A program made the translations under genes and the position numbers. Under the pieces are notes generated by a model. That model saw only the letters and a list, made by a program, of their open reading frames with translations. It was not told the DNA's origin and did not search any database. A stretch of DNA of 64,000 nt, from the IMG/VR virus record IMGVR_UViG_3300049460_000312, positions 219,374-283,373 of that record. One strand, 5' to 3'. Each line of letters opens with the position of its first letter. The stretch's first letter is position 1. Shown piece after piece: positions 21,026 through 60,221 of the stretch.

Positions 21026-21436
21026 TTAACTCCCTGCGTGAATGACGATGGTGTTGCCAGTCTGGGTATAGCCCAGCACACCGTTGCTGCAGTAGACAAA
21101 GCGACCCGGTCCTACGTCGGCGAGTAGCCGGTTGCCAGTCACCTTGACCCAGGAACCACCACTCCAATCCCAGCGACTGCCGTCACGCAGATCGTAGATA
21201 GACCCGCCTGGGCCCGCCTGCTCGCGTGCTTTCGCATCGGCGAGCTGGGTATCGGTGAGGATAAATTCCCCCAGCGCTACCAGCCCGCCTGCTACCAGGG
21301 TCTTGCTCGCATCGCCTTTGGTAAAATACGTGGCGCTCACACCCAGGGCCGGCACATTAGCTGCGTGATACGTCGCTGCTCGTGACTGAATAGCCGTGGC
21401 TGTGGTGCTTGAGAGTACTGTTTTATTGGAAAGCAT
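21026..21436 (-). CDS. Putative tail/virion accessory protein
   Basis: 136 aa with a RWDWSGGSW motif. Confidence 0.6.
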   Translation of the reverse strand: MLSNKTVLSSTTATAIQSRAATYHAANVPALGVSATYFTKGDASKTLVAGGLVALGEFILTDTQLADAKAREQAGPGGSIYDLRDGSRWDWSGGSWVKVTGNRLLADVGPGRFVYCSNGVLGYTQTGNTIVIHAGS

Positions 21437-22536
21437 TACATGAACCTCCGCACCGTATCGGGTCCGGCGTGAAATGTTTTACCCGTAATCGGGTTATGGA
21501 AGATCCGCCATACGCTCAGGGCTTGCACCATCTGCAGATCGGTCATCACCGCACTGCCGCTCCAGGAGTTGTCCGCGTTCTGGGTCCAGATTTGCTTGTT
21601 AAACAAATCGAAGATATAACGCTGGTCGCCCGTGAACTTGAGCGTTTTGAACAAGGCATTCTGTTGCGATTCGGCGGTGTAACCGTACGCACACGGACCG
21701 CGGAAGATCGCCAGCGACGGATCAGCACTCAGATCCACCGTGAAGTCAGCGCTCGGCTTATACGTCTGGTAACTGGCGCCAAACTCCGTGGTCGAGAAGG
21801 TGATGATGTCACCATTACGGACGATCTTGATACGCGTCGGTCCCAGACTACCCCAGCCCTGACCGGCCGTATTAGCCACATAGCCTGCGGCGGTGGCTGA
21901 TGCGCCATAGCCACCGTTACCGTAGGCAATCTGGTCGCTGGAGAAAAGATTCTTGGCGCCCGTCTTTTGCTGGTAGTTCTTGCCCACGAACCAGGACTTG
22001 CTGTTGCCACCCGGACTACGGATTGCCGTGAGCTTGTTCTCGTAGCCCGTAACCGGATCACGGGCAAAGGCGGCGACCAGACCTACATCGTCATCATCCG
22101 TATTGTCCGATGAGATCTCAACTTCGAGCGTGTACTGGTCGTACTTCTTTTTGCTCACAAAGCCCAGAATCGAGGCTGAGTTAAGCGTACTCATGATCGT
22201 GTCGGTGCCGCTGTCATACGACCAGCTGGAGAGCTCGCTCGGCAGGGCTGGTTGTGCATCCGTGCCAGTCTGGTGCGAAAAGCGATACCAGTTATTGAAC
22301 ACGTCCGCCATCGAGACGGTGCGAGCTTTTTCGTTGGCCAGCTCAGTGGCGTTTTCAGTGATCGAGGCCAGCGTCACGAGCCGGAAAGGTTTGGGTATGC
22401 CGTTGTTATCAGCCTGGATATACGAGCCTTCCTGACTGATCGGGAAAGCAGCTTCCATGCGGGCTTTGGCCTCTGCCTGCACTGCAGCGATCGTGGTCGG
22501 GCTGGCAAGCTGGCCTTGGAGCGGAAATGTGGACAT
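21436..22536 (-). CDS. Putative virion lectin-like protein (TSP C-terminal/L-type lectin-like)
   Basis: SSDNTDDDDVGLVAAF resembles the thrombospondin C-terminal DDD motif; 366 aa. Confidence 0.55.
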   Translation of the reverse strand: MSTFPLQGQLASPTTIAAVQAEAKARMEAAFPISQEGSYIQADNNGIPKPFRLVTLASITENATELANEKARTVSMADVFNNWYRFSHQTGTDAQPALPSELSSWSYDSGTDTIMSTLNSASILGFVSKKKYDQYTLEVEISSDNTDDDDVGLVAAFARDPVTGYENKLTAIRSPGGNSKSWFVGKNYQQKTGAKNLFSSDQIAYGNGGYGASATAAGYVANTAGQGWGSLGPTRIKIVRNGDIITFSTTEFGASYQTYKPSADFTVDLSADPSLAIFRGPCAYGYTAESQQNALFKTLKFTGDQRYIFDLFNKQIWTQNADNSWSGSAVMTDLQMVQALSVWRIFHNPITGKTFHAGPDTVRRFM

Positions 22537-23261: not shown

Positions 23262-23939
23262 TTAAGATGTAAAGGGCGTAGCCTGAGGAGTAAAGGCGCT
23301 GGTGTAAAGAGCCTTCCCTTTTGAAAGACGAACCTCGTCCATATAACCTGGAAAGGTGCCGTTACCATTCTGTACGTTACCAATGATGAGTGGGCCCGTA
23401 TTTACCCCAAACGTTTGTGAGCTCACAAACGAACCCACTAACGCCCCGTTATACCATGCAGACCACGTGTTACCCGATCGCGTAACAGCAAAGTGAAACC
23501 ACTGCCCGGTGACGAGAATGTCATTTACCAACAACTGGGCCTGTCCGGCATTGCCTGCGAGCTTCAGATAAATTTTACGCTGATAGAATTCAATCCAGCA
23601 TCGATTAACCTGATTCATGTCGGGCGATTTTTCTATAAAAACGGTGTCGTTCGCCACCGTCGTCAGATAACACCAGGCCTCCATGGTACAGTCTGCATTG
23701 AACTGCAGGTCAGCTGCATTGGGAGTGGTGACCATCGCGTTCGCGCCAGTCGGCAATAGCGAGGAACCCCCGAACCTGGCCTGAACGGTGCTGAGCGCCG
23801 CACCATTCGAAGCCGTCATCGGGTGACCGTACACGTCAACGATATTGGTTGAGCCGTTTGCCCCGTCGGCATGCAGGAGAAGGGAGGTAAAATTAGCCGC
23901 GACTACCTGACTGCGAGTCGCTAGAAGGGATTCAAACAT
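23262..23939 (-). CDS. LamG/concanavalin-like jelly-roll virion protein
   Basis: LLLHADG...CTMEAW...WFHFAVTR...GYMDEVRLSKG.ALYT..FTP; N-terminus MFESLL. Confidence 0.8.
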   Translation of the reverse strand: MFESLLATRSQVVAANFTSLLLHADGANGSTNIVDVYGHPMTASNGAALSTVQARFGGSSLLPTGANAMVTTPNAADLQFNADCTMEAWCYLTTVANDTVFIEKSPDMNQVNRCWIEFYQRKIYLKLAGNAGQAQLLVNDILVTGQWFHFAVTRSGNTWSAWYNGALVGSFVSSQTFGVNTGPLIIGNVQNGNGTFPGYMDEVRLSKGKALYTSAFTPQATPFTS

Positions 23940-23958
23940 ATCGCTTTTCCCTTTTTCC

Positions 23959-24657
23959 TTAGGAGGTAAATGGTGCGCTCGGCGGCGTGAACGCTGTGGT
24001 GTAAAGCGCTATGCCCTTCACCGTACGAAACTCGTCGATATAGCCGTTATAGTTGAAGGGCTTGGAACTGGTCGTTAATCCCCAGTTACCAATCATCAGA
24101 GGTCCGGCATAATTACCGAAAGTTGCCGAGCTGGTCCGAGTTCCCGCAGCTACTCCATCTATCCACAGCGTATAAAGATTTCCCAGCCGGGTCAACGCGA
24201 TGTGTTGCCATTGACCTGCTTTAAGTGCACCGGCATTCACGATCTTGGTGGCGGGCTGCGGCTCTCCATCCAGTTTCAGATAGGCCGTGCCTTGATAGAA
24301 TTCAATATACGACGACTGTGCAGCACTTGACCAGTTCGACAGATACTTGCAAACCGGCATCGAATCGTAGTTACTGAAATCAATGAGATACGACCAGAAT
24401 TCCAGCGTGAAGTCGGCGTCAAACCGTAACGTAGCATCATCGGTCACGACGATACTCGATGCCCAGTTAGGAAAGGAGGCCGACGCTCCCCCAAATTTAG
24501 AAAACGCGGTAGTGAGGGAGCCTGAGTTCGATGCTGTACACGTCCGACCATGGACGTCGACAATATTGGTCGAACCATTCGTCCCATCAAAATGTAGCAG
24601 CAACCGATTTGGATCAAGCGCCTGTGGTTTTCTGATAGCTAACAAAGCTTCTAACAT
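23959..24657 (-). CDS. LamG-like jelly-roll virion protein
   Basis: LLLHFDG...DFTLEFW...WQHIALTR...GYIDEFR; N-terminus MLEALL. Confidence 0.8.
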   Translation of the reverse strand: MLEALLAIRKPQALDPNRLLLHFDGTNGSTNIVDVHGRTCTASNSGSLTTAFSKFGGASASFPNWASSIVVTDDATLRFDADFTLEFWSYLIDFSNYDSMPVCKYLSNWSSAAQSSYIEFYQGTAYLKLDGEPQPATKIVNAGALKAGQWQHIALTRLGNLYTLWIDGVAAGTRTSSATFGNYAGPLMIGNWGLTTSSKPFNYNGYIDEFRTVKGIALYTTAFTPPSAPFTS

Positions 24658-24666
24658 AATTTATCC

Positions 24667-25965
24667 TTAGCTCGGCGACAAGAACTGCGACGGGTCGAGC
24701 GCAGTCCCTTTAATCAGCCGCACTTTACGGATATAGCCATTGAAATAGCTAGAGGAAATCGCGTCACCGCTATCACCGAGCCAGATAGCGTTCGCAGTCC
24801 CTACCACCTTCACGGTCGTCGCATACGTGGCTTCTTTCACCCCGTTCACATACAGACTCAACGAACCGGCTTTACGCACCAGCGCGAGGCGTGTAGGTGT
24901 ACCGTAGGCAATGCTCGACTGACTCTGCATTACCGGGAACGTACCATTGAAGCCCACGCCGTATTTCGTGGTATCACCAGCACTGTGACCCGCAAAGATC
25001 GACATTGAACCGTTAGCGCCCCAGGTACTGTAGTTACTGAACAGCGCCGGATACTGCACCGACCGCGCTGTTGGGTTGACCACCATTTCAAGCGTGAAGT
25101 CACCCGGCAAAATGAAATCAGGCTGAGTAGCCGTCAGCGTCAGATACTTGGAAGAACCATTCAGCGCAATACCACTTCCCGCTACTGATGCCGCGCCACC
25201 AATGCTGGAGATACTGCGTGTGTAGTGACTGGCGTCCGCGAGCGTGCCGTCCATGGCATTGATATCGAGCAGCGTGTCATAGTGATCGAATGGTGCGGTA
25301 GGTGGAGTGAAATCTCCGTCGTACAGTACTTGCTCCACCATGCGCATTTCATCCAAAAAGCCTGGGAACTGGGAGGCACCGTTGTACTGGTTACCGCCAA
25401 TGGTCCAGGTGCCGGTGGCCAGACCAAAGCCCAGTGCCGAAGCCAGTGTCTGCTGGCCAACTCCGTTGATATAGCCTTTGTAGACCCCTGCTTTCTTGAC
25501 CACCGCCCAGTGATTCCACTGGTTCAGCGGAAAAGCTGAAGTCGGTGCCAACGACTTCCAGCCGGCGCCATCAGTCAGGAAAATGCCCAGGCCCTTGTCA
25601 GACTGCTGGCCAATCGAGGTCTGACCGGTGCTGGTGTTCGCGGTCTTGCAGCTGAACATCGTGGTGTCACCAAACGCGCCATTACGGAACGCCCAGCCTT
25701 CGATCGTAAAGTTATCCGTGAGGACGAGACGGGATGAGCCCGGGAAAGAAAGGTTGCCTGTGCCAGGATTAAGCGCGGCGCCGCCAAACTTGGACTGGGA
25801 GGTACTCAGGGAGCAGCTGTTGGCCGTGGTGACGATGCCGTTCTCTTCCGGCATACTCGTTGAGCCATTGGTTCCGTCAAAGTGGATCAGCATCAACGTT
25901 TTGAGATCGACCGGTAGCACCCCGGTCGCCGGCTTTTTATACGCGGTAAGAAGTGCTTCTAACAT
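24667..25965 (-). CDS. Tandem LamG-like (two-domain) virion protein
   Basis: Two copies of the DFT[IL]E...G[FY][LI] jelly-roll signature; N-terminus MLEALL. Confidence 0.8.
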   Translation of the reverse strand: MLEALLTAYKKPATGVLPVDLKTLMLIHFDGTNGSTSMPEENGIVTTANSCSLSTSQSKFGGAALNPGTGNLSFPGSSRLVLTDNFTIEGWAFRNGAFGDTTMFSCKTANTSTGQTSIGQQSDKGLGIFLTDGAGWKSLAPTSAFPLNQWNHWAVVKKAGVYKGYINGVGQQTLASALGFGLATGTWTIGGNQYNGASQFPGFLDEMRMVEQVLYDGDFTPPTAPFDHYDTLLDINAMDGTLADASHYTRSISSIGGAASVAGSGIALNGSSKYLTLTATQPDFILPGDFTLEMVVNPTARSVQYPALFSNYSTWGANGSMSIFAGHSAGDTTKYGVGFNGTFPVMQSQSSIAYGTPTRLALVRKAGSLSLYVNGVKEATYATTVKVVGTANAIWLGDSGDAISSSYFNGYIRKVRLIKGTALDPSQFLSPS

Positions 25966-26203
25966 ACGGAGAGGCCCAGGAGAATTTAGTTATACACATA
26001 CGATTTACGGCATAAAGACCCGGCTTTGTGCCGGGCTTTTATGGGTAGCTTAAAGAGTGAACGGTGCGGTGGGTGGGGGGAAATGGCAGCCGTATAGACA
26101 GCCACGTCTTTCATGATCTGCACTTCATCGATGTAACCCGGAGAAACTCGTTGATAGAAATTACGGCACAAGGGTCGGGAGAACCCGACCCTATACCTGA
26201 GCT

Positions 26204-27364
26204 TTACTGCAAAACTTCTTTCAATACATTTTCAGTCAGTGACAAACCAGTCACAGTTTTAAGCGTATCGAAGTTGGTTCCGTCATTGCTCCCCTGAATC
26301 ACAAAGTTGGTGGGTTGTTGATTAGCCCCCGTGAGCGCGGCAATCTTGATAGAGTCAAACGAACGCGCCTGCCCCAGATCTATCATCCACCAGTGCGGTG
26401 GTGTCTGGCTTCCAGATGACCAGCGATGCTCCGGAAGCTGATCGATATAACCATCAATTGCATTGCCCGGCGCCTGAGGAAGACCCGTCAGCGCATAGTA
26501 GGTGCTAGCCGTCGCGACAACGCCGCTCTGACGACACCAGTTCGTAGCACTGGCGGTATCGAGAACCTGTACTTCACTCAGTGTAGCGTACCCATTACCC
26601 ACTGGAACAATGCTGTTCAAACGCACATAGCGATACGAGCCGGAGTTCGAGAACGAGGTCGGTGGGGTGAACGAGGCGGCGGTGTAGCGTGCGACACCGT
26701 TAGTAAACCGGAAGGCATCCATCAAGCCCGGGAAAGAAACACCCGTCGGGCCACCCGCCGTGCGGGCACCCACCGTTGGCTTATAAGCGCTGTACCATGG
26801 AATCGCCACAGCACCGATACTGCCCTGAGCAATACGACTGCCGTCCAGGTACAGAGAGATCGTAGTACCCTGCCTTACCGCTGCAATGTGTGACCAGACA
26901 TTCTGCGTCATAGGTACGGATGTAGAGACCAGATCCAGCAACGTGCCTGAATCACCCCGGATTAGTATTCGCGGTTTCGCGCCTGTAGACGTGTTACCTA
27001 CCAGCTCAAACGAAAATATCTGCTGATTGCCGGCAGTCTCGCCCTGGTAGTAAATACCACAGTCGTTGTTCGTCGGAATGTCGCTGATCCGATTGAGGAT
27101 CGCTTCGATCGTCCAGTCGTTGGTGCCGAGGTTAAACTCGCTGGCGTTGGGCGTGGTGTAACACGACAGCGCGCTGCGCAAATCCACAGCGGTGCCATGG
27201 GTATCTGTTGTAAAAGAAGGCGCCCCCGAGGCAGTCATCGGGTGGCCTTTCACATCAGTTCCGTTGCCATTAAACTGCATCAACAGTTTGACATAGGAGA
27301 AGTAAGGATCAGCTGGCGCAACCGGTATGCCCGGCGGCTTTCCAGTCAACAAAAATTCCAACAT
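26204..27364 (-). CDS. LamG-like plus F5/8-type C (discoidin) domain virion protein
   Basis: DWTIEA...WSHIAAVR...DAFRFT followed by NAIDG...WSS...HWWMIDLGQARSF...IQGSNDG; N-terminus MLEFLL. Confidence 0.8.
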   Translation of the reverse strand: MLEFLLTGKPPGIPVAPADPYFSYVKLLMQFNGNGTDVKGHPMTASGAPSFTTDTHGTAVDLRSALSCYTTPNASEFNLGTNDWTIEAILNRISDIPTNNDCGIYYQGETAGNQQIFSFELVGNTSTGAKPRILIRGDSGTLLDLVSTSVPMTQNVWSHIAAVRQGTTISLYLDGSRIAQGSIGAVAIPWYSAYKPTVGARTAGGPTGVSFPGLMDAFRFTNGVARYTAASFTPPTSFSNSGSYRYVRLNSIVPVGNGYATLSEVQVLDTASATNWCRQSGVVATASTYYALTGLPQAPGNAIDGYIDQLPEHRWSSGSQTPPHWWMIDLGQARSFDSIKIAALTGANQQPTNFVIQGSNDGTNFDTLKTVTGLSLTENVLKEVLQ

Positions 27365-27448
27365 AATGCGCACCGGCTAGAATAGAGGACATACGATTTG
27401 CGGCATAAAAGCCCGGGTTGCCCCCGGGCCCTTATGTCCACTAACTGA

Positions 27449-28447
27449 TCAAATCAGCTCCAGCACTGGCCGCCAGTACAGATTCGCGTTATACGCCGCC
27501 GTATTGGTTTTACCCGGATGATAGCTGATGGAGGACGCCGGCAAATAACCGCGCGTGATCGTCTTCAGCCCAGGGATCATCTCCTGATGAATGTTGTTTT
27601 CAGTCATGCCGATGTAGGGCGAACCGTTGTAGGCCATCTGGGCATCGTAAGCCGCCCAGTTCTCACCGCGCTGGGATGCCGAGGTCCAGGACAGCAGCTT
27701 CATGATCAGGTCGTTCCATTCCGAACCCACCAGATTCAGCGTAGTGTCGTAGGAGTCGGCCGTGTACCAGTTGGTGTTGAGCGGTGAGTTAGTTGCGCCC
27801 GTATTGCTATTGACAAAATCCGAAGTCAGGTCAAATCCTGGCGGCACGGCCGTCGGCAGGCGAACCTTGAACTGCGAGTTCTGGACGGTGATAATCCGCA
27901 GCTGGTTGGTCGCGGCCATCGTATTATAGGTACGCGGCCCCACGTCGTCGATACCGTACACCAGACCTCCCGCATACAGCGTAGACCAGGCACAGGTGCC
28001 CACCGGTTGGTACGGCATGAACAACGTTTTGCCCTTATAGGCAAACTTGAGCCACATCTGGTTGGCGTAGGGATTCTTCGCCGGTACGCTGACGTTAGCC
28101 CAGGCGATAAACGTCGTCCAGTCGATAAAGTCACTTGCATTCACGGTGCCGTAAAAGCCCATATCCAGATCGCCGGCGATCAGTGCCTGCGGTCCCGGTC
28201 CACTATAAGCCGCCGCCGTCGCCACAACGTTGGGGCTGAATACCCGGTCCGCGCCTTTATAGACTTCAAACATGTAGTAGTACGTCACTCCGATCAATAC
28301 GCTTGTATCGATGTAGGTGGCCGCATTACCGGCCAGGGTGGCGTAAACTGCCGGCAGATTTGCCGGATCAATAGCAGAAGCTGATCGATAGACACGTACA
28401 CCGTCTGCTGTCGTATTCAGGTTCTGCCAACCAATTTTAATTTGCAT
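27449..28447 (-). CDS. Virion structural protein: FN3-like N-domain plus GPGPQ-GD domain (phiKZ-type paralogue family)
   Basis: IGW.N...GVRVYRS...YIDT...TYYY; SGPGPQALIAGDLDMGFYG...WRPVLELI. Confidence 0.75.
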   Translation of the reverse strand: MQIKIGWQNLNTTADGVRVYRSASAIDPANLPAVYATLAGNAATYIDTSVLIGVTYYYMFEVYKGADRVFSPNVVATAAAYSGPGPQALIAGDLDMGFYGTVNASDFIDWTTFIAWANVSVPAKNPYANQMWLKFAYKGKTLFMPYQPVGTCAWSTLYAGGLVYGIDDVGPRTYNTMAATNQLRIITVQNSQFKVRLPTAVPPGFDLTSDFVNSNTGATNSPLNTNWYTADSYDTTLNLVGSEWNDLIMKLLSWTSASQRGENWAAYDAQMAYNGSPYIGMTENNIHQEMIPGLKTITRGYLPASSISYHPGKTNTAAYNANLYWRPVLELI

Positions 28448-28473
28448 GATAAAACTACCTTAAGAGTCAGCGA

Positions 28474-29499
28474 TTACAGAACCAGTTCCAGCACCGCGCG
28501 CCATGCCGGATTGACGGTGACCCCTGCGGCGTTGTTCACCGCGACTGTCGAAGTGGTGTTGCTCGTGACGATTGATCCTGCGCAGCCCGGATTCCAGCCA
28601 GAGCCGGCGCTGTTGAGTCGCCCACCGCGCCACGGGGCGCTGGTATTGGCCAGACCAGCCCATTGCTGGCAAAGATCGCTGATGACAAGGTTCGACACGT
28701 AGGCACCAAACTCGTCCCGCAGATTGGTGAGGCTACCGTAGAGTTTGTCCCCTACGTAACGCGGAGAGTAAGCACCGGTGGTGCCGACAATTGCTCCCAT
28801 GATGTCGTCCCATTCGTTGCTCGCCAGGGCGGCGGTCAGCAAAGAGTTGTTGGTCGACGTCGCGGGAATACCGCTCTGACTGGCAGGCATGCCCTGTAGA
28901 ATCCGGGGCAGTACCGTGAAGCCACCAATGACGAGCGGCTTGTACTGGTTAGTGGCAGTGACACCGCTCGGTGTGACTAATCCGTTATCATTGGTGCCGT
29001 AAATCAGACCCAGCTGATAAAGCGCATTGTAGGTGACGCCATATCGCAGGATGCCACGGGCGATAAAGAGCACCTTACCCTTATACGCCATCTTGACCCA
29101 GTCCTTGTCAGCCGGTCCAACCGTACCCGTTGTTACCCCTACCGCGGCTGTCAGGCTGGCATAGGTAATCAGATCAGAGGATTTCGCGATACCGAAATAG
29201 CCCAGGTCCCAGTCACCCGCCTGCAGTACCTGCGGGCCCGGGCCGGTATCGGTCGGCGCTACCGCTTTGACCACAATGTTTTTGGTCAGCAGGACGTCAC
29301 TACCCTTGACACTGCCCATGCGATAGTAGTATTTCGTGCCGCGTACAGCGGTCGTATCCACGTAGGTGTTGCTTCCTGCAGCGAGACTTGCCAGCGGCGC
29401 CGGCAAGGGTGTATCGGGGATCGGGTTGGTATCGCGGTACACATTGACGCCATCTTCCAGCGCGCCGTTATAATTGTTCCAATTAATGGTGAGGTTCAT
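28474..29499 (-). CDS. Virion structural protein, same family
   Basis: INW.N...GVNVYRD...YVDT...KYYY; TGPGPQVLQAGDWDLGYFG...WRAVLELV. Confidence 0.75.
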   Translation of the reverse strand: MNLTINWNNYNGALEDGVNVYRDTNPIPDTPLPAPLASLAAGSNTYVDTTAVRGTKYYYRMGSVKGSDVLLTKNIVVKAVAPTDTGPGPQVLQAGDWDLGYFGIAKSSDLITYASLTAAVGVTTGTVGPADKDWVKMAYKGKVLFIARGILRYGVTYNALYQLGLIYGTNDNGLVTPSGVTATNQYKPLVIGGFTVLPRILQGMPASQSGIPATSTNNSLLTAALASNEWDDIMGAIVGTTGAYSPRYVGDKLYGSLTNLRDEFGAYVSNLVISDLCQQWAGLANTSAPWRGGRLNSAGSGWNPGCAGSIVTSNTTSTVAVNNAAGVTVNPAWRAVLELVL

Positions 29500-29512
29500 A
29501 TCCTACCTGTGC

Positions 29513-30508
29513 TTAGGCATTAAAAGTAATGGTGGGGCTACTCGGCGCCTGAGGATTACCTGCGCTCTGAGGAACAATTACCGTGAGGCGGGTGAGATCG
29601 ACCACCGGGACAATAGCCGCACTACCCACGCTGCTCGCCGCCGTGGTTTGCGGAACAAACGCAGTCAGACGCTGCACGCTACTGGCGTCGACCGGATTAA
29701 CCGAAGCGCTGGCGAAAGCCTTATTGATATCCCCCACCTCCAGATCATTGATCTGGGGCTTGAACAGCTCACTGGCACCCACGAGCTCCAGCACCGGTCG
29801 CCAACTAGCCGAAGACACCTTGGTGTTCATGGTGTAAGTGCGAATATCTCCGCCCAAGCCTGGCCGAATCACGTACTTGGTGGTGTCTGAGCTGACACTT
29901 TCGCGCAGGACTTCACTCCCGGACGTAATCTGGCTATCGGTGTAGGCGGCCCACTTGTCACTGGGGTAAGCCGATCCCATGCCACGCGAGCAGACTCGAT
30001 ACAGCAGATCCGTCCACATTGATGCACGATAAGGCGAGATATCGGTACTGTAGCTACCGGCCGCGATATAAGCCAGCGTAGTAGGGTCCGACGCATCGCT
30101 GGTGAGGGTACGGATCTTGAAGCGATATGGACCTGTACTTGCCAACCGGATCTGGTTAGTGGGTGCGCCGTTATTGAACGTGCCAGCGTCGTCCGTACCA
30201 TAGACCAGGCCTGCCGCATACAGTTTGTTCCACGTCAGTGTATTAAAGAGCGGTCGCTTGGCGATAAAGAGATACTTGCCGTTATAGACAAACTTCAACC
30301 AGGGGTCACCTGCATTGATTTGGCTGTAGGCGGCGAGATCAGAAATCTGCGTAGCCAGGGCGGTCGATGTCAATACATCACTGGCTGCTACTTCACCAAA
30401 GAAACCGAGATTCTGATCACCGAAAAGCAACTGCTGAGGCCCAGGACCGGAGTCCAGTAAGATGGGACGATTCCCACCGCCTCCTGTCATCAAAAGAAGT
30501 TCGAACAT
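29513..30508 (-). CDS. Virion structural protein, same family, lacking the FN3 domain
   Basis: SGPGPQQLLFGDQNLGFFG...WRPVLELV; N-terminus MFELLL. Confidence 0.75.
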   Translation of the reverse strand: MFELLLMTGGGGNRPILLDSGPGPQQLLFGDQNLGFFGEVAASDVLTSTALATQISDLAAYSQINAGDPWLKFVYNGKYLFIAKRPLFNTLTWNKLYAAGLVYGTDDAGTFNNGAPTNQIRLASTGPYRFKIRTLTSDASDPTTLAYIAAGSYSTDISPYRASMWTDLLYRVCSRGMGSAYPSDKWAAYTDSQITSGSEVLRESVSSDTTKYVIRPGLGGDIRTYTMNTKVSSASWRPVLELVGASELFKPQINDLEVGDINKAFASASVNPVDASSVQRLTAFVPQTTAASSVGSAAIVPVVDLTRLTVIVPQSAGNPQAPSSPTITFNA

Positions 30509-30591
30509 GGTGCATTCCCGAGAAAGCTTACATACGATTTGCGGCAGCATAAAAGGCCGGGGGTAACCCCGGCCCTTATGACTTTTAACGC

Positions 30592-31245
30592 TTAGACGTC
30601 CAGCGTCGCCGGGATCACCGGCAGGTCAGCCGCAACAGTAGCGGCATCAACCGCTTCCTTCAGGGTCCAGCTTGCTCCATAGACCGCGGAGACGCGCTGG
30701 AAAGCCGCGTTCGACATGGCCACGATCGCGTTGGCGGTAGCCATCACGACCTTGTTTTCGAGCGTCCGGAACGGCAGGGTCTGGTCACCCTGACCGGCGG
30801 CGATAAAACCGTCCGCCGTGACCCGCAGACCCGTGATGTTCAGACAGTCGCGCTCGCGCAGCTGCACGCCGAGCACACCATCAGTGCCACCGAAGTCGTA
30901 CTGGAAACCTTCACCCAGCTTGGCATCGCGCAGCGTGTCGATCTGTGTTGAGAGTGCCGCCTTCTGCGTGGTGAGCATGCCCGCCAGTTCATCGGTGGTG
31001 TAGTCACGCACGGCCCATTTCTGGGTCCACACACCATCGATCTGTTCGGGTTTGTCTTCAGTGACTACGTCGCCAGTCGGCGACGGGGCCGACTGCACTA
31101 CCGAATAACCGAGGTCTTCGATGAGCGATTCGTCCGGCTCCGCCGCGAAGCTGATCGTCGGATTGTCCTGACGGACCTTGAACAACGAGACCGGATACTC
31201 CAGTGTCTCGTTGTTGATCAGCAGGGTTGCTGCAGTGATTTTCAT
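30592..31245 (-). CDS. Tail fibre assembly chaperone (DUF4376-like)
   Basis: YPVS...E..P...DG.W.Q.W N-domain, then RD....GF.Y...QLR..D..NITG...FRT.EN; directly downstream of the fibre gene. Confidence 0.75.
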   Translation of the reverse strand: MKITAATLLINNETLEYPVSLFKVRQDNPTISFAAEPDESLIEDLGYSVVQSAPSPTGDVVTEDKPEQIDGVWTQKWAVRDYTTDELAGMLTTQKAALSTQIDTLRDAKLGEGFQYDFGGTDGVLGVQLRERDCLNITGLRVTADGFIAAGQGDQTLPFRTLENKVVMATANAIVAMSNAAFQRVSAVYGASWTLKEAVDAATVAADLPVIPATLDV

Positions 31246-31297: not shown

Positions 31298-34200
31298 TTA
31301 GGCCGTCGCGCCCACCGAGCCCGTCCACTTCGTGCCATCCCACAAGAGGATAACGTTGGTGTACGTCGCGCCCAGCGTCGGTGCCGTACCGCCGGACCAG
31401 CTGATGCTGCCCGGCCAGGTGATTGCAGCGGCGTTACCCGTCACGGCGATCACGACCGTCATGGCCCGGTTTGCACCCGGGGCATTCACGAATGCCAGCG
31501 TCTTGGCCGTTGCCGCGCTCACAGTGAATGCCTGGTTCGCAGCCAAGTCCAAGTTGGCTGTCGTCGCCACGATCGGCAGATCGTAACGGTCCAGACGCTT
31601 CAGACCCACCGTGGTGCCGTTGTTGTAGGCCACGTAGTAGGCGCTGTCATTCGGCGCCAACGGGGTCGTCAGCGTTGCCACGTCCGTCCAGTTGCCACCC
31701 TTTTGCACGTAGGCCTTTGCGTCATTCGGCGCAGCCACCGTGGCCAAGGTCGAGAGATCGGTCCAGTTACCGCCCTTCTGAACATACGCCTTCGCGTCAT
31801 TCGGCGCTTTCGTATCCGTCAGCGTCGACAGGTCCACCCACGCACCCGTCTTCTGTACGTAGGCTTTCGTGTCGTTCGGAGCCGGCGTGAAGGCCGTCCA
31901 TGCACCATCCTTACGGAGATACAGGCCATGGTCGAGCGGAGCTTCGCCAACAGCCGGAGCCGGCAGCGGCACCCACGCACCGTTCTCACGAACGTACGGC
32001 GTGTCGTCGAGGTTGGCATCGTAGACGTTACCACCGCCCAGATAACCCAGCCAGCTCCAGGCCACCGTGGTGGTCTTCTGGAAGAAGCGCAGTGTCGAGC
32101 TGTTGAGGAAGTAGTCACCCACCACCCCGTCAGCCGGATTCGGATCACGGCCGAGCACAATCCAGCGCGTGCCTTGGTCACCCTTATCGCCCTTCAAACC
32201 TTGCAGACCCTGGTCACCCTTCAGACCTTGCAGACCTTGCAGACCGCGATCACCCTTGGGACCCTGAATCGGACCCACATCGATGAACGCGGAACCGGTC
32301 CACGCCCAGCCATGCAGCGTGTCGGACGCGATGTACATATCGCCCGCATTGGTAGCCGAGCCCGGCAGAGCCGCGCTATTGGCCACCGTGCCAAGAATCT
32401 TGACGCCCGGACCCATCGGACCCGTATCGCCTTGATCACCCTTGTCACCGGTGTCACCCTTCAGACCTTGAACGCCTTGAAGACCTTGGTCGCCTTGGAT
32501 GCCTTGGAGACCCTGGTCTCCCTTATCACCCTTGTCGCCCTTCCACTGTCCCACATCCACCCAGACCGTACCGTTGTACGAGTAAAGGTGATCGCCCACG
32601 CGGTAAGCATCACCTTGCGTGTTGCCCGAGACTGGGAGGTCACCCGAGGTCGCAACAGTGCCGAGGATCTTGACGTTGTTACCGGCTGTGCCAGTATCGC
32701 CCTTATCCCCCTTCACGCCTTGCAAACCCTGAATGCCCTGAATACCTTGCAAACCGGTATCGCCCTTATCCCCCTTGTCACCCTTCAGGCCCTGGAGACC
32801 CTGGATACCCTGATCGCCCTTCGGACCTTGAATCTGGCCCAAATCGGTGAATGCTGCACCCGTCCAGCCCCAGAAGTGGCCCTGGATCAGATAACCATCA
32901 CCGATGGCTTCAGTGGTGTGCGCTGGCAGTTGCGAGGAATCCGCGTACGTACCGAGAATCTTGATACCGGGACCGAGGTCACCCTTGACACCCTGGATAC
33001 CCTGAATACCCTGGATACCTTGATCGCCTTGGTCACCCTTATCGCCTTTATCGCCTTTGACACCCTGAATGCCCTGAATACCCTGGATACCTTGGTCACC
33101 CTTCGGGCCGACGAACGGACCTGCATCCACCCACGCGGTGTTCACGTAGATGAAGAGGTTCGAACCGACGATGTACGCGTCTTCTTGCGCCGGGTTGCCG
33201 GGTAGAGCAGCCTGATTCGCAACCGTACCCTTGATGACGATACCACGACCCATCGGGCCAGTCAGACCCACGTCACCCTTGGCGCCCTTCAGCGAAGCGA
33301 TCCATTGAGCCTGCGTACCCACGTAGCCGTTGTCGACTGCTGTCTGGTAAGCTGAGTCACCGGACACACCCACCAGCGAAGCCAACCACTGGGCCTGCGT
33401 ACCGACAAAGCCACCGGCGACTGCTGCCGTGTAAGCCGAGTCGCCTTGATCGCCCTTGTCACCCTTATCGCCCTTGACACCCTGGATACCCTGAATGCCT
33501 TGGTCACCCTTCGGGCCTTGCACCGGACCGACGTCGATAAACGCAGTGCCCGTCCATGCCCAACCGTGGAGGGTATCCGCGGCAATATACATATCGCCAG
33601 CGGTCGTCGACGAACCCGGCAGTGCGGAGCTCGTAGTCACCGTACCGAGGATCTTCACACCAGGACCCATTGGGCCTTGGATACCTTGCAGACCTTGGAT
33701 ACCCTGATCGCCCTTCGGGCCAACGAGGGTTGCCAACCATGCCGATTGCGAGCCCACAAAGCCGCTATCCAGCGCGAGCTGGTAAGCCGTTTTGCCCACG
33801 AGCGATTGCAGCCATGCGGCTTGCGTACCCACGAAACCATTGGCTTGCGCCACCTGGAACGCGGTCTTACCGTTGAGCGACGTGATCCACTGCGAGAGCG
33901 TCATCGTGCCCGGGATCAGCCCCGCATCCTTCGCGAGCTGGTAAGCGGACTTACCGTCCGGCCCCACCTGACCCACCGGCACCCAGTTCGTGCCATCCCA
34001 CACCCACATCACGGCGTCAATGATGAACGCGTCGCCTGCGGTGTTGCCAGCCGGACCCGGCGGCAGATCACCCACGGTCTGGAACGAACCCAGCACCTTC
34101 AGGCCGATACCATCTGCACCATGCAACGACGCGAGCCAGTCATCGGCTGTGCCGCTGAACCCAGCGATCAACGCGAGGTCATAGGCCGACTTACCGTCCG

Positions 34201-34879
34201 GGCCTTGCAGGTTACCGAGATAGGTCCAGGCGCCACCCGACAGCGCCCAGAATTGCGGTCCGATCAGGTAGCAGTCACCTTCTTGCGATTCACCCACCGG
34301 CGGCAGGGAAGCCTGATCAGCAACTGCACCCAGCAGACGGGCACCATTACCCATCGCGCCTTGTGCGCCGGCGTCGCCCTTCACGCCTTTCAGCGAGGCC
34401 GTCCATTGCGCTTCCGTACCCACAAAGCCAGCCAGCACAGCGGACTCGTACGCGCTCTTGCCTGCAGCGCCGTCGTTGCCTGCCGTACCCGTATCGCCCT
34501 TGTCGCCTTTATCGCCTTTGAGACCCTGGATACCTTGGAGACCCTGGTCGCCTTTGACACCCTTCAGACTGGCGAGCCAGTTGGCTTGCGTATCGGCGTA
34601 ACCGCCAGCAACAGCGAGTTCGTACGCGGATTTACCGTTCGTACCATCTGCGCCCTTGGCACCCACCAGTGACGCGAGCCACTGGGCTTGGGTGCCGGCA
34701 TAGCCGCCGTCAACGGCGACCTGGTAAGCGGATTTCCCCGCTACCATCAACTGCGCCAGGGTGAACTTGACGTTCTTGCCACCCTGGATGGCCTCGACTA
34801 CTTCAGCACCGGTGATGGCCGATGCATCCGGAAGGTCAGAGATCCGGTAATACAGTGCGGGATCGAGTGTATCACTCAT
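31298..34879 (-). CDS. Collagen-like long tail fibre
   Basis: 1193 aa; Gly-X-Y tracts, 9 SAY..A...G..GT...W..SL repeats, 7-8 [KR]ILGTV...LP....GD.Y...W beta modules, foldon-like repeats, C-terminal tip domain. Confidence 0.9.
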   Translation of the reverse strand: MSDTLDPALYYRISDLPDASAITGAEVVEAIQGGKNVKFTLAQLMVAGKSAYQVAVDGGYAGTQAQWLASLVGAKGADGTNGKSAYELAVAGGYADTQANWLASLKGVKGDQGLQGIQGLKGDKGDKGDTGTAGNDGAAGKSAYESAVLAGFVGTEAQWTASLKGVKGDAGAQGAMGNGARLLGAVADQASLPPVGESQEGDCYLIGPQFWALSGGAWTYLGNLQGPDGKSAYDLALIAGFSGTADDWLASLHGADGIGLKVLGSFQTVGDLPPGPAGNTAGDAFIIDAVMWVWDGTNWVPVGQVGPDGKSAYQLAKDAGLIPGTMTLSQWITSLNGKTAFQVAQANGFVGTQAAWLQSLVGKTAYQLALDSGFVGSQSAWLATLVGPKGDQGIQGLQGIQGPMGPGVKILGTVTTSSALPGSSTTAGDMYIAADTLHGWAWTGTAFIDVGPVQGPKGDQGIQGIQGVKGDKGDKGDQGDSAYTAAVAGGFVGTQAQWLASLVGVSGDSAYQTAVDNGYVGTQAQWIASLKGAKGDVGLTGPMGRGIVIKGTVANQAALPGNPAQEDAYIVGSNLFIYVNTAWVDAGPFVGPKGDQGIQGIQGIQGVKGDKGDKGDQGDQGIQGIQGIQGVKGDLGPGIKILGTYADSSQLPAHTTEAIGDGYLIQGHFWGWTGAAFTDLGQIQGPKGDQGIQGLQGLKGDKGDKGDTGLQGIQGIQGLQGVKGDKGDTGTAGNNVKILGTVATSGDLPVSGNTQGDAYRVGDHLYSYNGTVWVDVGQWKGDKGDKGDQGLQGIQGDQGLQGVQGLKGDTGDKGDQGDTGPMGPGVKILGTVANSAALPGSATNAGDMYIASDTLHGWAWTGSAFIDVGPIQGPKGDRGLQGLQGLKGDQGLQGLKGDKGDQGTRWIVLGRDPNPADGVVGDYFLNSSTLRFFQKTTTVAWSWLGYLGGGNVYDANLDDTPYVRENGAWVPLPAPAVGEAPLDHGLYLRKDGAWTAFTPAPNDTKAYVQKTGAWVDLSTLTDTKAPNDAKAYVQKGGNWTDLSTLATVAAPNDAKAYVQKGGNWTDVATLTTPLAPNDSAYYVAYNNGTTVGLKRLDRYDLPIVATTANLDLAANQAFTVSAATAKTLAFVNAPGANRAMTVVIAVTGNAAAITWPGSISWSGGTAPTLGATYTNVILLWDGTKWTGSVGATA

Positions 34880-34902: not shown

Positions 34903-35454
34903 TCAGGAAACCGGCTTTTCGAGAACGCGGATGCGGCGTTTCTCATCGGTCGGGATATTACCGTCGACATTCCGCGCAGCAGGCTGCTTGGAGTTAGGCG
35001 CGTAGGGGAAGAAATAATCCCCAGCGAGCCAGGCGAGAGACGTGGTGGTGATTGTCAAGGTAAGACCATTGACCGGGATGCTGTCAAGAGCGGCATCCAC
35101 GACTTCCGAGGCCACGAGGTTCAGACCCAGACCCGCATTGATCTGCGGCAAGATAGCATGAACCGTGGTGGGAAAAGTCATGGGATCGAAGGGGACTAAT
35201 TCCCCTTCCGGCAAGCGCGAGAGCGCATCCATGCTCAGGCGCTTATAATTCACGTCCCGCGCCGCGTCACGTCGCGTCGTCGTATACGCTGTGGCCGCAA
35301 CCGTTGTCGAGCCAGCAACCGGAGCGGAACCTGCAGCAGGCGTTCCGAAATCGAAGTTGACGTTACTCGGCAACACCGGCGTCTGGGCGTTACGAATCAG
35401 TTGTGACAGGCGCACTTGGCTCGTGCCTTGATAGGGCTTGATACGACTTGCCAT
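34903..35454 (-). CDS. Putative virion protein associated with the fibre
   Basis: 183 aa; YKRL...TVHAILPQIN..LGL.L...EV.D motif typical of jumbo-phage virion proteins. Confidence 0.6.
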   Translation of the reverse strand: MASRIKPYQGTSQVRLSQLIRNAQTPVLPSNVNFDFGTPAAGSAPVAGSTTVAATAYTTTRRDAARDVNYKRLSMDALSRLPEGELVPFDPMTFPTTVHAILPQINAGLGLNLVASEVVDAALDSIPVNGLTLTITTTSLAWLAGDYFFPYAPNSKQPAARNVDGNIPTDEKRRIRVLEKPVS

Positions 35455-59428: not shown

Positions 59429-59516
59429 TAAAAAGAAGCATTGATCGCCAGAGCGGGACGCCGCTCTGGCTTTTATGTCGGAATCCTATGTCATTCTTTG
59501 GGTTCCACTATACATC

Positions 59517-60221
59517 ATGCTTGAGGCGCTACTCACTGCCAAAAAAGCCGCAGCCCCCGCTGGGTTGCCACAGGATCAACCATTGATCGGCTTTAATTAC
59601 GACCGTAATGCCAGCACCGGCACCACGGCCATTACTTCCTCTCACTCCGCCAGCCAGTTGATTGTGCCGGGTGTAGCCGTCCCTGGTTACAACAAAGTGC
59701 TAAGCGCCAACGCGCAGTCCAATACCTTCACGAATTCATCGGCGATGAACGTAGGGACAGGTGACTTCACGATGGAGATGCGCGTGCTGTTAAAAGGCAC
59801 ATCCGGCTACGTACATCTTTGGTGGTCGACCAGTACGAACTCTACCGGTATCCGGATGGAAGATTCTGGCTTCGGCGATAAGCTCGCGTTCTTTATTAAT
59901 GCCAATACTCACGTCTTTTATGCCGGTGGTAAGACCAAAGCAGATATGCAGGTCTGGCGTCATTTGGTGCTGATGCGCAAGAACGGGAATGTCAGCTTTT
60001 ATTGGGATGGCGTACGCATCGGTATCGCTGCTGATCGTGGCGCTGACTTTTCGCAACAGGTATTGCCTGCTGCTGATGCACTATCGGCCTTCACGGCATC
60101 AGGCATTGGCTACGCAGGCTATGGTGCCGGGTACTGTGTAGCGGAATGGGCTTTTTACAACCGTGCCAAGTTTGACGGGATGACATCGTTCACACCGCCG
60201 TCTGGTTACATTGCGCCGTAA
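59517..60221 (+). CDS. LamG-like jelly-roll virion protein, displaced paralogue
   Basis: MLEALL N-terminus; GTGDFTMEM...WRHLVLMRKNG...FTPPS. Confidence 0.75.
   Translation: MLEALLTAKKAAAPAGLPQDQPLIGFNYDRNASTGTTAITSSHSASQLIVPGVAVPGYNKVLSANAQSNTFTNSSAMNVGTGDFTMEMRVLLKGTSGYVHLWWSTSTNSTGIRMEDSGFGDKLAFFINANTHVFYAGGKTKADMQVWRHLVLMRKNGNVSFYWDGVRIGIAADRGADFSQQVLPAADALSAFTASGIGYAGYGAGYCVAEWAFYNRAKFDGMTSFTPPSGYIAP

What the first reader, a model, noticed from the sequence alone, without database searches (positions are those of the whole stretch)
23262..30508. Lectin-domain virion family sharing an M[LF]E[ASFL]LL N-terminal tag
Seen: six proteins start MFESLL (23939), MLEALL (24657), MLEALL (25965), MLEFLL (27364), MFELLL (30508) and MLEALL (59517). 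They continue into different payloads: one LamG, two LamG, LamG plus discoidin, or the GPGPQ-GD domain. The tag is conserved at amino-acid level with different codons, so it is a protein signal, not a DNA recombination site. Several of these genes look more AT-rich than nrdA (visual impression only). Inference: a plug-and-play adhesin system in which a short docking peptide attaches interchangeable glycan-binding heads to a shared tail or capsid site, tuning host range.
Basis: partly seen in the sequence, partly recalled or inferred. Interest (0 to 1): 0.72.

Follow-up and report, generated by a model that had tools for sequence, protein, structure and literature searches.

The report
Shared N-terminal tag on jumbo-phage lectins
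A Ralstonia jumbo phage puts the same six-residue start (M-L/F-E-x-L-L) on a dozen virion-type proteins with unrelated sugar-binding folds, and the same tag heads virion proteins of phiKZ and many related giant phages, so it is most likely a common address that fixes swappable binding domains to the particle, probably to the head.

Summary
M[LF]E.LL occurs six times in six frames of the window, always at the start of a long ORF. The whole 283-kb genome has 12 such genes, against 0.017 expected by chance. The tag sits on three payload classes with no detectable sequence similarity: LamG (with or without discoidin), a "GPGPQ" domain that models as a C-type-lectin-like fold, and a glycine-rich domain. 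Third codon positions vary, so conservation is at protein level.

The tag is not private to this phage:
- About a third of the 150 best GPGPQ-family representatives start with it.
- phiKZ gp83 and gp298 and PhiPA3 gp238, all annotated virion proteins, carry it.
- The sister phage RP12 and SPN3US have none.

AlphaFold models it as a short, low-confidence helix on a Gly/Pro/Ala/Lys-rich linker. It lies outside a modelled trimer interface.

The untagged SPN3US relatives are head (or neck) proteins by mass spectrometry of tailless particles, so a capsid site is more likely than a tail site.

Most tagged genes have a late-type TATG promoter. An extended box, ATC[CG]TATGT, occurs only upstream of tagged genes.

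Docking is inferred and no partner was found.

The parts
23262..23939 (-). Tagged gene, 225 aa: MFESLL, then a linker, then one Laminin_G_3 (ConA-like) domain
   Evidence: Regex hit. Pfam PF13385 E 3.7e-20. PHROG matches to internal parts of large baseplate and virion proteins.
23959..24657 (-). Tagged gene, 232 aa: MLEALL, then a linker, then one Laminin_G_3 domain
   Evidence: AF2 model has pLDDT 88; residues 3-6 form a helix, residues 1-10 average about 64, and the beta-sandwich scores above 90. FLC1-1B orthologue is 72% identical.
24667..25965 (-). Tagged gene, 432 aa: MLEALL plus two Laminin_G_3 domains
   Evidence: FLC1-1B gp150 starts MLEALL.
25996..26004 (-). ATC[CG]TATGT box, 39 nt upstream of the ATG at 25965, preceded by a second TATG
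26204..27364 (-). Tagged gene, 386 aa: MLEFLL, Laminin_G_3 and F5/8 type C (discoidin)
   Evidence: FLC1-1B gp154 starts MLEFLL.
27389..27397 (-). ATC[CG]TATGT box upstream of the ATG at 27364
27449..28447 (-). Untagged paralogue, 332 aa: FN3-like N-domain plus GPGPQ (C-type-lectin-like) domain
   Evidence: phrog_1062 E 2.6e-58. tblastn to SPN3US E 1.6e-22. The N-terminus resembles SPN3US gp146/149 and PhiPA3 gp237.
28474..29499 (-). Untagged paralogue, 341 aa: FN3-like N-domain plus GPGPQ domain
29513..30508 (-). Tagged gene, 331 aa: MFELLL, Gly-rich linker, GPGPQ domain (C-type-lectin-like model), disordered C-terminal tail
   Evidence: phmmer finds 1563 relatives. AF2 model. VIA-align matches to the CTLD fold. 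Modelled trimer.
30530..30538 (-). ATC[CG]TATGT box upstream of the ATG at 30508
30592..31245 (-). DUF4376 protein, 217 aa; likely chaperone of the neighbouring fibre
   Evidence: Pfam PF14301 E 3e-15. DUF4376 is listed as a tail-fibre chaperone domain in Alteromonas phages (PMC10579305).
31298..34879 (-). Collagen-like fibre protein, 1193 aa, immediately upstream of the cluster
   Evidence: phrog_3904 tail fiber E 4e-284. The RP31 orthologue ORF150 was detected in virions (PMC5468394 Table S3).
59483..59491 (+). ATC[CG]TATGT box upstream of the ATG at 59517
59517..60221 (+). Tagged gene, 234 aa: MLEALL, Ala/Pro linker and a divergent Laminin_G_3 domain
   Evidence: An FLC1-1B orthologue starts MLEALL.

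Best explanation
The six window genes belong to a set of 12 in this genome. Each encodes a small late protein built as follows: an extreme N-terminal helix of 6-8 residues (M-L/F-E-x-L-L), then a Gly/Pro/Ala/Lys-rich linker of 8-20 residues, then a ligand-binding domain. The domain is LamG (with or without discoidin), a C-type-lectin-like 'GPGPQ' domain, or a glycine-rich domain.

The tag is an old feature of a large virion-protein family of phiKZ-like jumbo phages, carried by phiKZ gp83 and gp298 and PhiPA3 gp238. The untagged SPN3US 'paralog family B' (gp138-154) belongs to the same family. In this Ralstonia-phage lineage the tag has spread onto further payload folds.

Inferred mechanism: the tag is a common address or anchor. 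It inserts into one conserved site of the particle and so displays interchangeable binding domains on flexible tethers. The site is most likely on the head, because the untagged SPN3US relatives are in tailless particles.

The GPGPQ-type members probably oligomerise through their domains, leaving the tags free. They may form a heterotrimer with the two FN3-type paralogues that are encoded directly downstream in several phages.

Shown: the tag, its distribution, the payload folds, late-type promoters and the virion annotation of homologues. Inferred: docking, the site, and the adhesion role.
For: Tag at the N-terminus of 6 window genes and 12 genome genes, against 0.017 expected.

Three payload classes show no detectable mutual similarity, yet M1, E3 and L6 are invariant.

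Among the 150 best GPGPQ-family representatives, 49 start with the tag (as matched by a slightly broader pattern that also allows I/V/M at position 2, D at position 3 and other hydrophobic residues at positions 5-6) and roughly 20 more with near-variants. All are followed by a short linker and then an SGPGP-type motif or a variant (GPGN/S/T/D).

Untagged relatives have other N-terminal modules in the same position, or are internal domains of proteins of up to 2172 aa.

phiKZ gp83 and gp298 both start MFELLL and are annotated virion structural proteins; gp83 is noted as a 'structural head protein'. PhiPA3 gp238 is likewise annotated.

In the phage collection, 166 phage records, where identified phiKZ-like jumbo phages (phiKZ, PhiPA3, SPN3US, Erwinia phages), hold the family, mostly as 'virion structural protein'.

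SPN3US gp138-154 were found in tailless particles (PMC5105663; PMC5694885).

AF2 gives the tag as a helix at pLDDT 61-64 while the domains score above 90, in two different folds.

A three-copy model scores 0.56 against a best control of 0.00. In the tool's calibration this mark was reached by 21 of 30 proteins solved as pairs of one chain and 0 of 23 solved as single chains. No interface residue lies in the tag.

The payload model resembles C-type-lectin-like folds.

Most tagged genes (9 of 12; the others mostly lie directly behind another tagged gene) have TATG boxes 20-40 nt upstream. TATG is the phiKZ late promoter (PMC4666361).
Against: No binding partner was found. Phyletic profiling across five genomes gave nothing structural.

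Neither phiKZ gp83 nor gp298 appears in the text of the phiKZ capsid structure or the whole-virion atlas, so their place is unknown.

Head location was shown only for untagged SPN3US relatives. SPN3US itself has no tag.

In this phage, FLC1-1B and PhiEaH1 the cluster follows a gene annotated as a tail fibre and a fibre-chaperone-like gene, which argues for a tail site.

Virion presence of the window's own proteins is untested. RP31, the nearest phage with a proteome, lacks these genes.

The fold match is middling, with Z no higher than 7.8.
Confidence: 0.5

Rival explanations
1. Tail or baseplate docking. The tag plugs accessory lectin heads onto the collagen-like fibre or the baseplate rim, and they act as auxiliary receptor-binding proteins that shape host range.
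For: The cluster lies directly downstream of a 1193-aa gene matching tail-fibre families and a DUF4376 chaperone-like gene. The same order is seen in FLC1-1B and, after a 'putative tail fiber protein', in Erwinia phage PhiEaH1.

The LamG payloads match internal segments of proteins annotated as baseplate wedge subunits.

In RP12 the same slot holds other paralogues that share their own N-terminus.
Against: SPN3US family members are present in tailless particles.

The phiKZ atlas assigns 29 tail proteins, and its text names neither gp83 nor gp298. phiKZ gp83 is noted as a head protein in its record.

Most tagged genes of this genome lie scattered among DNA-metabolism genes, not in the fibre cluster.
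Confidence: 0.2
2. Capsid-targeting sequence. The tag directs diverse proteins into the prohead interior, as the N-terminal CTS of T4 internal proteins does, and they are carried inside the head or ejected.
For: The tag is at the extreme N-terminus, as in the T4 CTS (established knowledge, not tested here).

The family is head-associated in SPN3US, and its abundant members are listed as 'Head ejection?'.

The phiKZ capsid model holds 330 chains of unidentified minor proteins on the inner surface.
Against: The payloads are LamG, discoidin, C-type-lectin-like, FN3-like and Kelch-like. These are the kinds of domains phages usually show on their outside.

The same domains occur inside giant proteins annotated as baseplate wedge subunits or virion structural proteins in other phages.

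No evidence of cleavage was found.
Confidence: 0.17
3. The tag is an oligomerisation element or an integral part of the domain fold, not an address.
For: It is predicted as a helix. Some C-type lectins trimerise through an N-terminal helical neck, for example the tetranectin and collectin hits.
Against: It is only 6-8 residues long and is separated from the domain by a Gly/Pro linker.

It has low pLDDT next to very confident domains.

It is absent from the modelled trimer interface.

The same tag sits on three unrelated folds.
Confidence: 0.05
4. The conservation reflects mRNA-level or turnover signals, not virion assembly. Candidates are a translation-initiation context for late mRNAs lacking a Shine-Dalgarno sequence, or an N-terminal stability signal.
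For: Half of the tagged genes lack a Shine-Dalgarno-like sequence. The first codons are A/T-rich in a 56% GC genome. A shared upstream box exists.
Against: Variation is concentrated at third codon positions, and Leu is encoded by both the CTN and TTR codon families.

The tag is kept in phages of very different base composition, such as phiKZ.

Other late genes of the genome do not carry it.
Confidence: 0.04

Closest known systems
SPN3US 'paralog family B' (gp83, gp138-154, gp161, gp237) and phiKZ gp83 (Thomas et al., PMC5105663 and PMC5694885)
   Same: The GPGPQ-domain proteins of the window are sequence relatives of SPN3US gp145-153 and phiKZ gp83. This is a multi-copy family whose number varies between related giant phages, and its members are virion proteins.
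   Different: The SPN3US members have no M-L/F-E-x-L-L tag. They carry FN3-like or 'LL..IN..NP' N-domains instead. In the Ralstonia phage the tag also heads LamG and glycine-rich proteins that are not members of that family. In the passages of these papers read here, and in a full-text search for the peptide, the tag is not described.
Short conserved N-terminal anchor peptides of secondary receptor-binding proteins in branched tailspike systems (KP32/K1-5/SP6-type), and the N-terminal tail of the adenovirus fibre
   Same: A short conserved N-terminal peptide serves as the attachment element for exchangeable distal domains. This comparison rests on my own knowledge and was not tested here.
   Different: Those systems dock trimeric tailspikes or fibres at a known partner, either a T4gp10-like domain or adaptor, or the penton base. 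Here the payloads are small lectin-type domains, the partner is unknown, a dozen genes share the tag, and relatives are in the head.
T4 capsid targeting sequence (CTS) of internal proteins
   Same: A roughly 10-residue N-terminal address shared by unrelated cargo proteins of the head (my own knowledge).
   Different: [quoted passage not shown] Cleavage and interior location are untested here, and the payload types argue for display.
T4 Hoc and other Ig/FN3-type capsid decoration proteins
   Same: Non-essential surface display of binding domains on the head for weak adhesion (my own knowledge). The family here includes FN3-like domains and head-located members.
   Different: Hoc binds through a C-terminal capsid-binding domain and is a single gene. 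Here a tiny N-terminal tag is shared by many paralogues.

Membership tests
Laminin_G_3 / ConA-like lectin superfamily (PF13385) | Profile match above Pfam's gathering score | tested here: met
   The five tagged window proteins (23939, 24657, 25965, 27364, 59517) score 34.5-108 bits against a cut-off of 27.6. The AF2 model is a beta-sandwich with pLDDT 88.
F5/8 type C (discoidin) domain (PF00754) | Profile match above the gathering score | tested here: met
   The 386-aa protein matches at residues 284-370 with 56.8 bits against a cut-off of 28.2.
phiKZ gp83 / SPN3US paralog family B virion proteins | Sequence homology to named members | tested here: met
   Window protein 29513-30508 gives tblastn E 1e-13 to phiKZ gp83 and E 6e-22 to SPN3US gp145; eight places match in SPN3US. 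This holds for the three GPGPQ proteins of the window only, not for the LamG proteins.
phiKZ gp83 / SPN3US paralog family B virion proteins | Presence in the virion, in the head fraction | not testable with these tools
   Known only for the SPN3US members and from the phiKZ record notes. No proteome exists for this phage.
C-type lectin-like (CTLD/FGE/DGR variable protein) fold | Structural similarity over most of the domain | tested here: inconclusive
   VIA-align gives nearly all of the top 50 as CTLD-type folds, with Z 4.4-7.8. Foldseek found nothing at E <= 0.001. The tool warns that Z under 8 is middling.
C-type lectin-like fold | Ca2+/sugar-binding motif (EPN/QPD, WND) | not tested
   No residue-level superposition was done.
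Anchor-peptide docking of secondary receptor-binding proteins (KP32/SP6-type) | Short conserved N-terminal peptide on exchangeable proteins | tested here: met
Anchor-peptide docking of secondary receptor-binding proteins (KP32/SP6-type) | A defined docking partner (T4gp10-like domain or adaptor) | tested here: inconclusive
   Phyletic profiling found no partner candidate. No targeted search for T4gp10-like domains was made.
T4-type capsid targeting sequence | N-terminal address removed by the prohead protease | not testable with these tools
   This needs N-terminal mapping of virion proteins.
phiKZ-type late genes | TATG promoter motif shortly upstream | tested here: met
   TATGT is enriched in non-coding DNA: 76 of 199 copies lie in 10% of the genome. 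It is present 20-40 nt upstream of 9 of the 12 tagged genes. The motif definition comes from PMC4666361. Transcription itself was not tested.

The most novel reading that the evidence does not exclude
M-L/F-E-x-L-L is a universal, so far undescribed virion-address peptide of phiKZ-like (nucleus-forming) jumbo phages. A 6-8-residue N-terminal helix suffices to load any soluble domain onto a fixed capsid site. Lineages such as this Ralstonia phage have exploited it to build a variable coat of a dozen lectins, expressed from their own promoter class. phiKZ gp83 and gp298, which are not mentioned in the text of the published virion atlas, would be the model cases.
Probability: 0.3. Interest if true: 0.8.

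Novelty: new variant of a known kind. Interest (0 to 1): 0.62.

Why it matters
If a six-residue peptide is enough to place a protein on a jumbo-phage particle, three things follow.
- It would explain how these phages gain and lose whole sets of surface-binding domains: 0 tagged genes in RP12, 2 in phiKZ, 12-13 here.
- It would give a place in the virion to phiKZ proteins that cryo-EM has not located.
- It would offer a very small display handle for phiKZ-like phages.

It also marks out a distinct sub-class of late promoters. If the site proves to be the head, these lectins are better read as Hoc-like environmental adhesins than as host-range determinants.

Tried and rejected
1. Lineage-private tag. 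The LamG homologue search and the pattern counts in RP12, FLC9, RSF1 and AD1 first suggested a tag private to this clade. The exhaustive search with the GPGPQ protein overturned that.

2. Relatives in IMG/VR by single protein: none found.

3. RP31 virion proteome. RP31 and RP12 carry different genes in this slot, so the proteome says nothing about the tagged proteins.

4. Partner by phyletic pattern (present in this phage, FLC1-1B and phiKZ; absent in RP12 and SPN3US). This returned only the family itself, an SspB-like protein and a 93-aa protein. None is a credible docking site.

5. Foldseek against the PDB: no match at E <= 0.001.

6. The single complex job went to a homotrimer before I saw the conserved [tag][FN3][FN3] gene triads. 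The heterotrimer could therefore not be tested.

I dropped it and did not send it elsewhere.

8. Literature search for the tag letters: no relevant paper.

9. The 183-aa neighbour (34903-35454) as an 'LL..IN..NP'-type family B member: only a weak match, E 0.007 in a pairwise comparison. Left open.

10. De novo 6-mer enrichment upstream of genes did not recover the promoter. The targeted TATGT scan did.
Full report
**What the window is.** The window is bases 219374-283373 of a 283,373-bp virus record with direct terminal repeats. [quoted passage not shown] Those phages are in turn nearest to the phiKZ-related phage RP12 (PMC11530567; PMC5468394).

**The observation.**
- A six-frame scan for M[LF]E.LL finds exactly six matches in the 64 kb.
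- Pfam confirms one LamG, two LamG, and LamG plus discoidin. It finds nothing for the GPGPQ protein.
- The whole genome has 12 tagged ORFs of 200 aa or more. Composition predicts 0.017.
- The six tagged genes outside the window carry the GPGPQ domain (three genes), a Gly_rich_2-like domain (two genes) and a LamG-like 'virion structural' family (one gene).
- With the first 12 residues removed, the three payload classes show no BLASTP similarity to each other.
- Across 25 tagged proteins, M1, E3 and L6 never vary. Residues 7-22 are enriched in Ala, Gly, Pro and Lys.
- Leu is written with both codon families and third positions vary freely. Selection therefore acts on the peptide.

**Distribution.**
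- Pattern counts give 13 hits in FLC1-1B (control 1), two spurious hits in RP12, and chance levels in FLC9, RSF1 and AD1.
- A relaxed scan of complete genomes gives 13 tagged genes in FLC1-1B, 12 here, 2 in phiKZ, and none in RP12 or SPN3US.
- The two phiKZ genes are gp83 (MFELLL, GPGP-type domain, Kelch-like repeats) and gp298 (MFELLL, Kelch-like). Both are annotated virion structural proteins, and gp83 is noted as a head protein.
- An exhaustive phmmer search with the tagged GPGPQ protein finds 1563 representatives. Of the best 150, 49 begin with the tag (as matched by a slightly broader pattern that also allows I/V/M at position 2, D at position 3 and other hydrophobic residues at positions 5-6) and roughly 20 more with near-variants such as MYELLL or MHEALL. 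In each, a short linker and an SGPGP-type motif or a variant (GPGN/S/T/D) follow.
- Untagged members carry something else at the front: an FN3-like domain, a roughly 50-residue domain that resembles (from my own recall, not tested) the N-terminal region of Mtd-type tail-fibre proteins, or an 'LL..IN..NP' domain. Others are internal modules of proteins of up to 2172 residues.
- In the phage collection the family occurs in 166 phage records, where identified phiKZ-like jumbo phages, mostly as 'virion structural protein'.
- LamG homologues from metagenomes mostly have other short N-terminal peptides followed by Gly-rich linkers. A short N-peptide, a linker and a LamG domain looks like a general design.
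- Two metagenomic LamG proteins carry the same tag. One lies on a phiKZ-like contig.

**Structure.**
- AF2 models the tagged GPGPQ protein with a very confident domain (residues 11-250). The tag is a helix at residues 2-8 with pLDDT about 61. The C-terminal tail is disordered.
- The LamG protein gives the same picture, with a helix at residues 3-6 at about 64.
- VIA-align places the GPGPQ domain among C-type-lectin-like folds, including the Lcl C-domain, PvdO, TvpA, CEL-I, CD72 and Mtd. Z values reach at most 7.8. Foldseek finds nothing.
- A three-copy model of residues 1-262 scores 0.56 against a best control of 0.00 and gets the verdict 'supports binding'. In the tool's calibration this mark was reached by 21 of 30 proteins solved as pairs of one chain and 0 of 23 solved as single chains. 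Interface residues lie between 19 and 243, and none is in the tag. The tool warns that its calibration used two copies.

**Gene order.** A tagged GPGPQ gene followed by one or two FN3-type paralogues recurs in several places:
- this window (30508, 29499, 28447);
- FLC1-1B gp153/152/151;
- PhiPA3 gp238/237/236;
- Erwinia phage PhiEaH1 twice;
- a metagenomic contig.

SPN3US shows the same period, with an 'LL..IN..NP'-type protein in place of the tagged one. This suggests a co-assembling triad. I could not test it.

**Where in the virion.**
- Thomas and colleagues found SPN3US gp138-154 in tailless particles and class them as head or neck proteins. The 2017 paper calls this 'paralog family B', with 2 members in phiKZ and 20 in SPN3US (PMC5105663; PMC5694885).
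- The text of the phiKZ capsid structure and of the whole-virion atlas mentions neither gp83 nor gp298. The atlas builds its fibres from the gp131 family.
- Against a head site, the cluster here, in FLC1-1B and in PhiEaH1 follows a fibre-like gene and a DUF4376 chaperone-like gene.

**Expression.**
- TATGT is strongly enriched in non-coding DNA and lies 20-40 nt upstream of 9 of the 12 tagged genes (most of the rest lie directly behind another tagged gene). It often occurs in tandem after a GC-rich hairpin.
- TATG is the phiKZ late promoter, with its G as the start site (PMC4666361).
- The extended form ATC[CG]TATGT occurs seven times in the genome, and all seven lie 24-39 nt upstream of tagged start codons. 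Four of the five copies in FLC1-1B do the same.

**Conclusion.**
- The tag is real, ancient and linked to virion proteins.
- It behaves as a tethered terminal element, not as part of a fold or an oligomer interface.
- The most economical reading is a shared address or anchor for the particle. I favour the head surface (0.5) over the tail (0.2) or the head interior (0.17).
- Docking itself, the site and the biological role remain inferred.

Noticed in passing
window 25996-26004, 27389-27397, 30530-30538, 59483-59491 (also genome 63192, 74360, 122971): The 9-mer ATC[CG]TATGT occurs 7 times in the 283-kb genome. All 7 copies lie 24-39 nt upstream of tagged start codons. They are usually preceded by a GC-rich hairpin and a first TTTATGC box. 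Four of the five copies in FLC1-1B also precede tagged genes. This looks like a dedicated sub-class of late promoter or a 5' leader element.
   Followed up: partly
L007 (RP12 136000-156000): ORF148, ORF149, ORF152: In RP12 the slot downstream of the fibre gene holds three proteins of about 555 aa and no tagged genes. ORF148 and ORF149 share an N-terminus (MNVV[DE]IDG.LYIDGSPYN), and ORF152 has a looser version of it. This is a second case of a common N-terminus on paralogues at the same locus.
   Followed up: no
L006 (Burkholderia phage FLC9 gp305-325) and L021 (SPN3US gp138-151): Large arrays of paralogues share an N-terminal 'LL..IN..NP...L' motif. In SPN3US this domain replaces the tag on every third GPGPQ gene.
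   Followed up: partly
L005 12001 (FLC1-1B gp149) and L082 4641 (PhiEaH1 BASYS00086): The deposited start codons seem off. FLC1-1B gp149 is annotated from an internal Met, but a GTG 19 codons upstream behind an AGGA gives (M)LELIL. The PhiEaH1 gene is annotated 8 codons upstream of MLEMMM.
   Followed up: partly
window 31298-34879 and 30592-31245: The 1193-aa protein combines collagen-like Gly-X-Y runs with about eight repeated globular modules, and is followed by a DUF4376 chaperone-like gene. It is called a tail fibre only by homology. On its upstream side lies a 183-aa protein that matches PHROG families annotated as virion structural proteins and only weakly resembles (pairwise E 0.007) a head-located SPN3US family B member.
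   Followed up: partly
genome 209076-209477 (outside the window): A 133-aa SspB-like (ClpX adaptor-like) protein is shared with FLC1-1B and phiKZ but not with RP12 or SPN3US. This is the same phyletic pattern as the tag and is probably coincidence.
   Followed up: no
window 21436-22536: A 366-aa protein matches tail-fibre and virion-structural PHROGs (phrog_33406, phrog_21285). It has its own TATGT box upstream. It is untagged and adjacent to the cluster.
   Followed up: no
window 29513-30508, residues 263-331: The tagged GPGPQ protein ends in a roughly 70-residue Ala/Ser/Pro/Val-rich tail modelled as disordered. The solitary paralogues elsewhere in the genome (231-243 aa) lack it.
   Followed up: no
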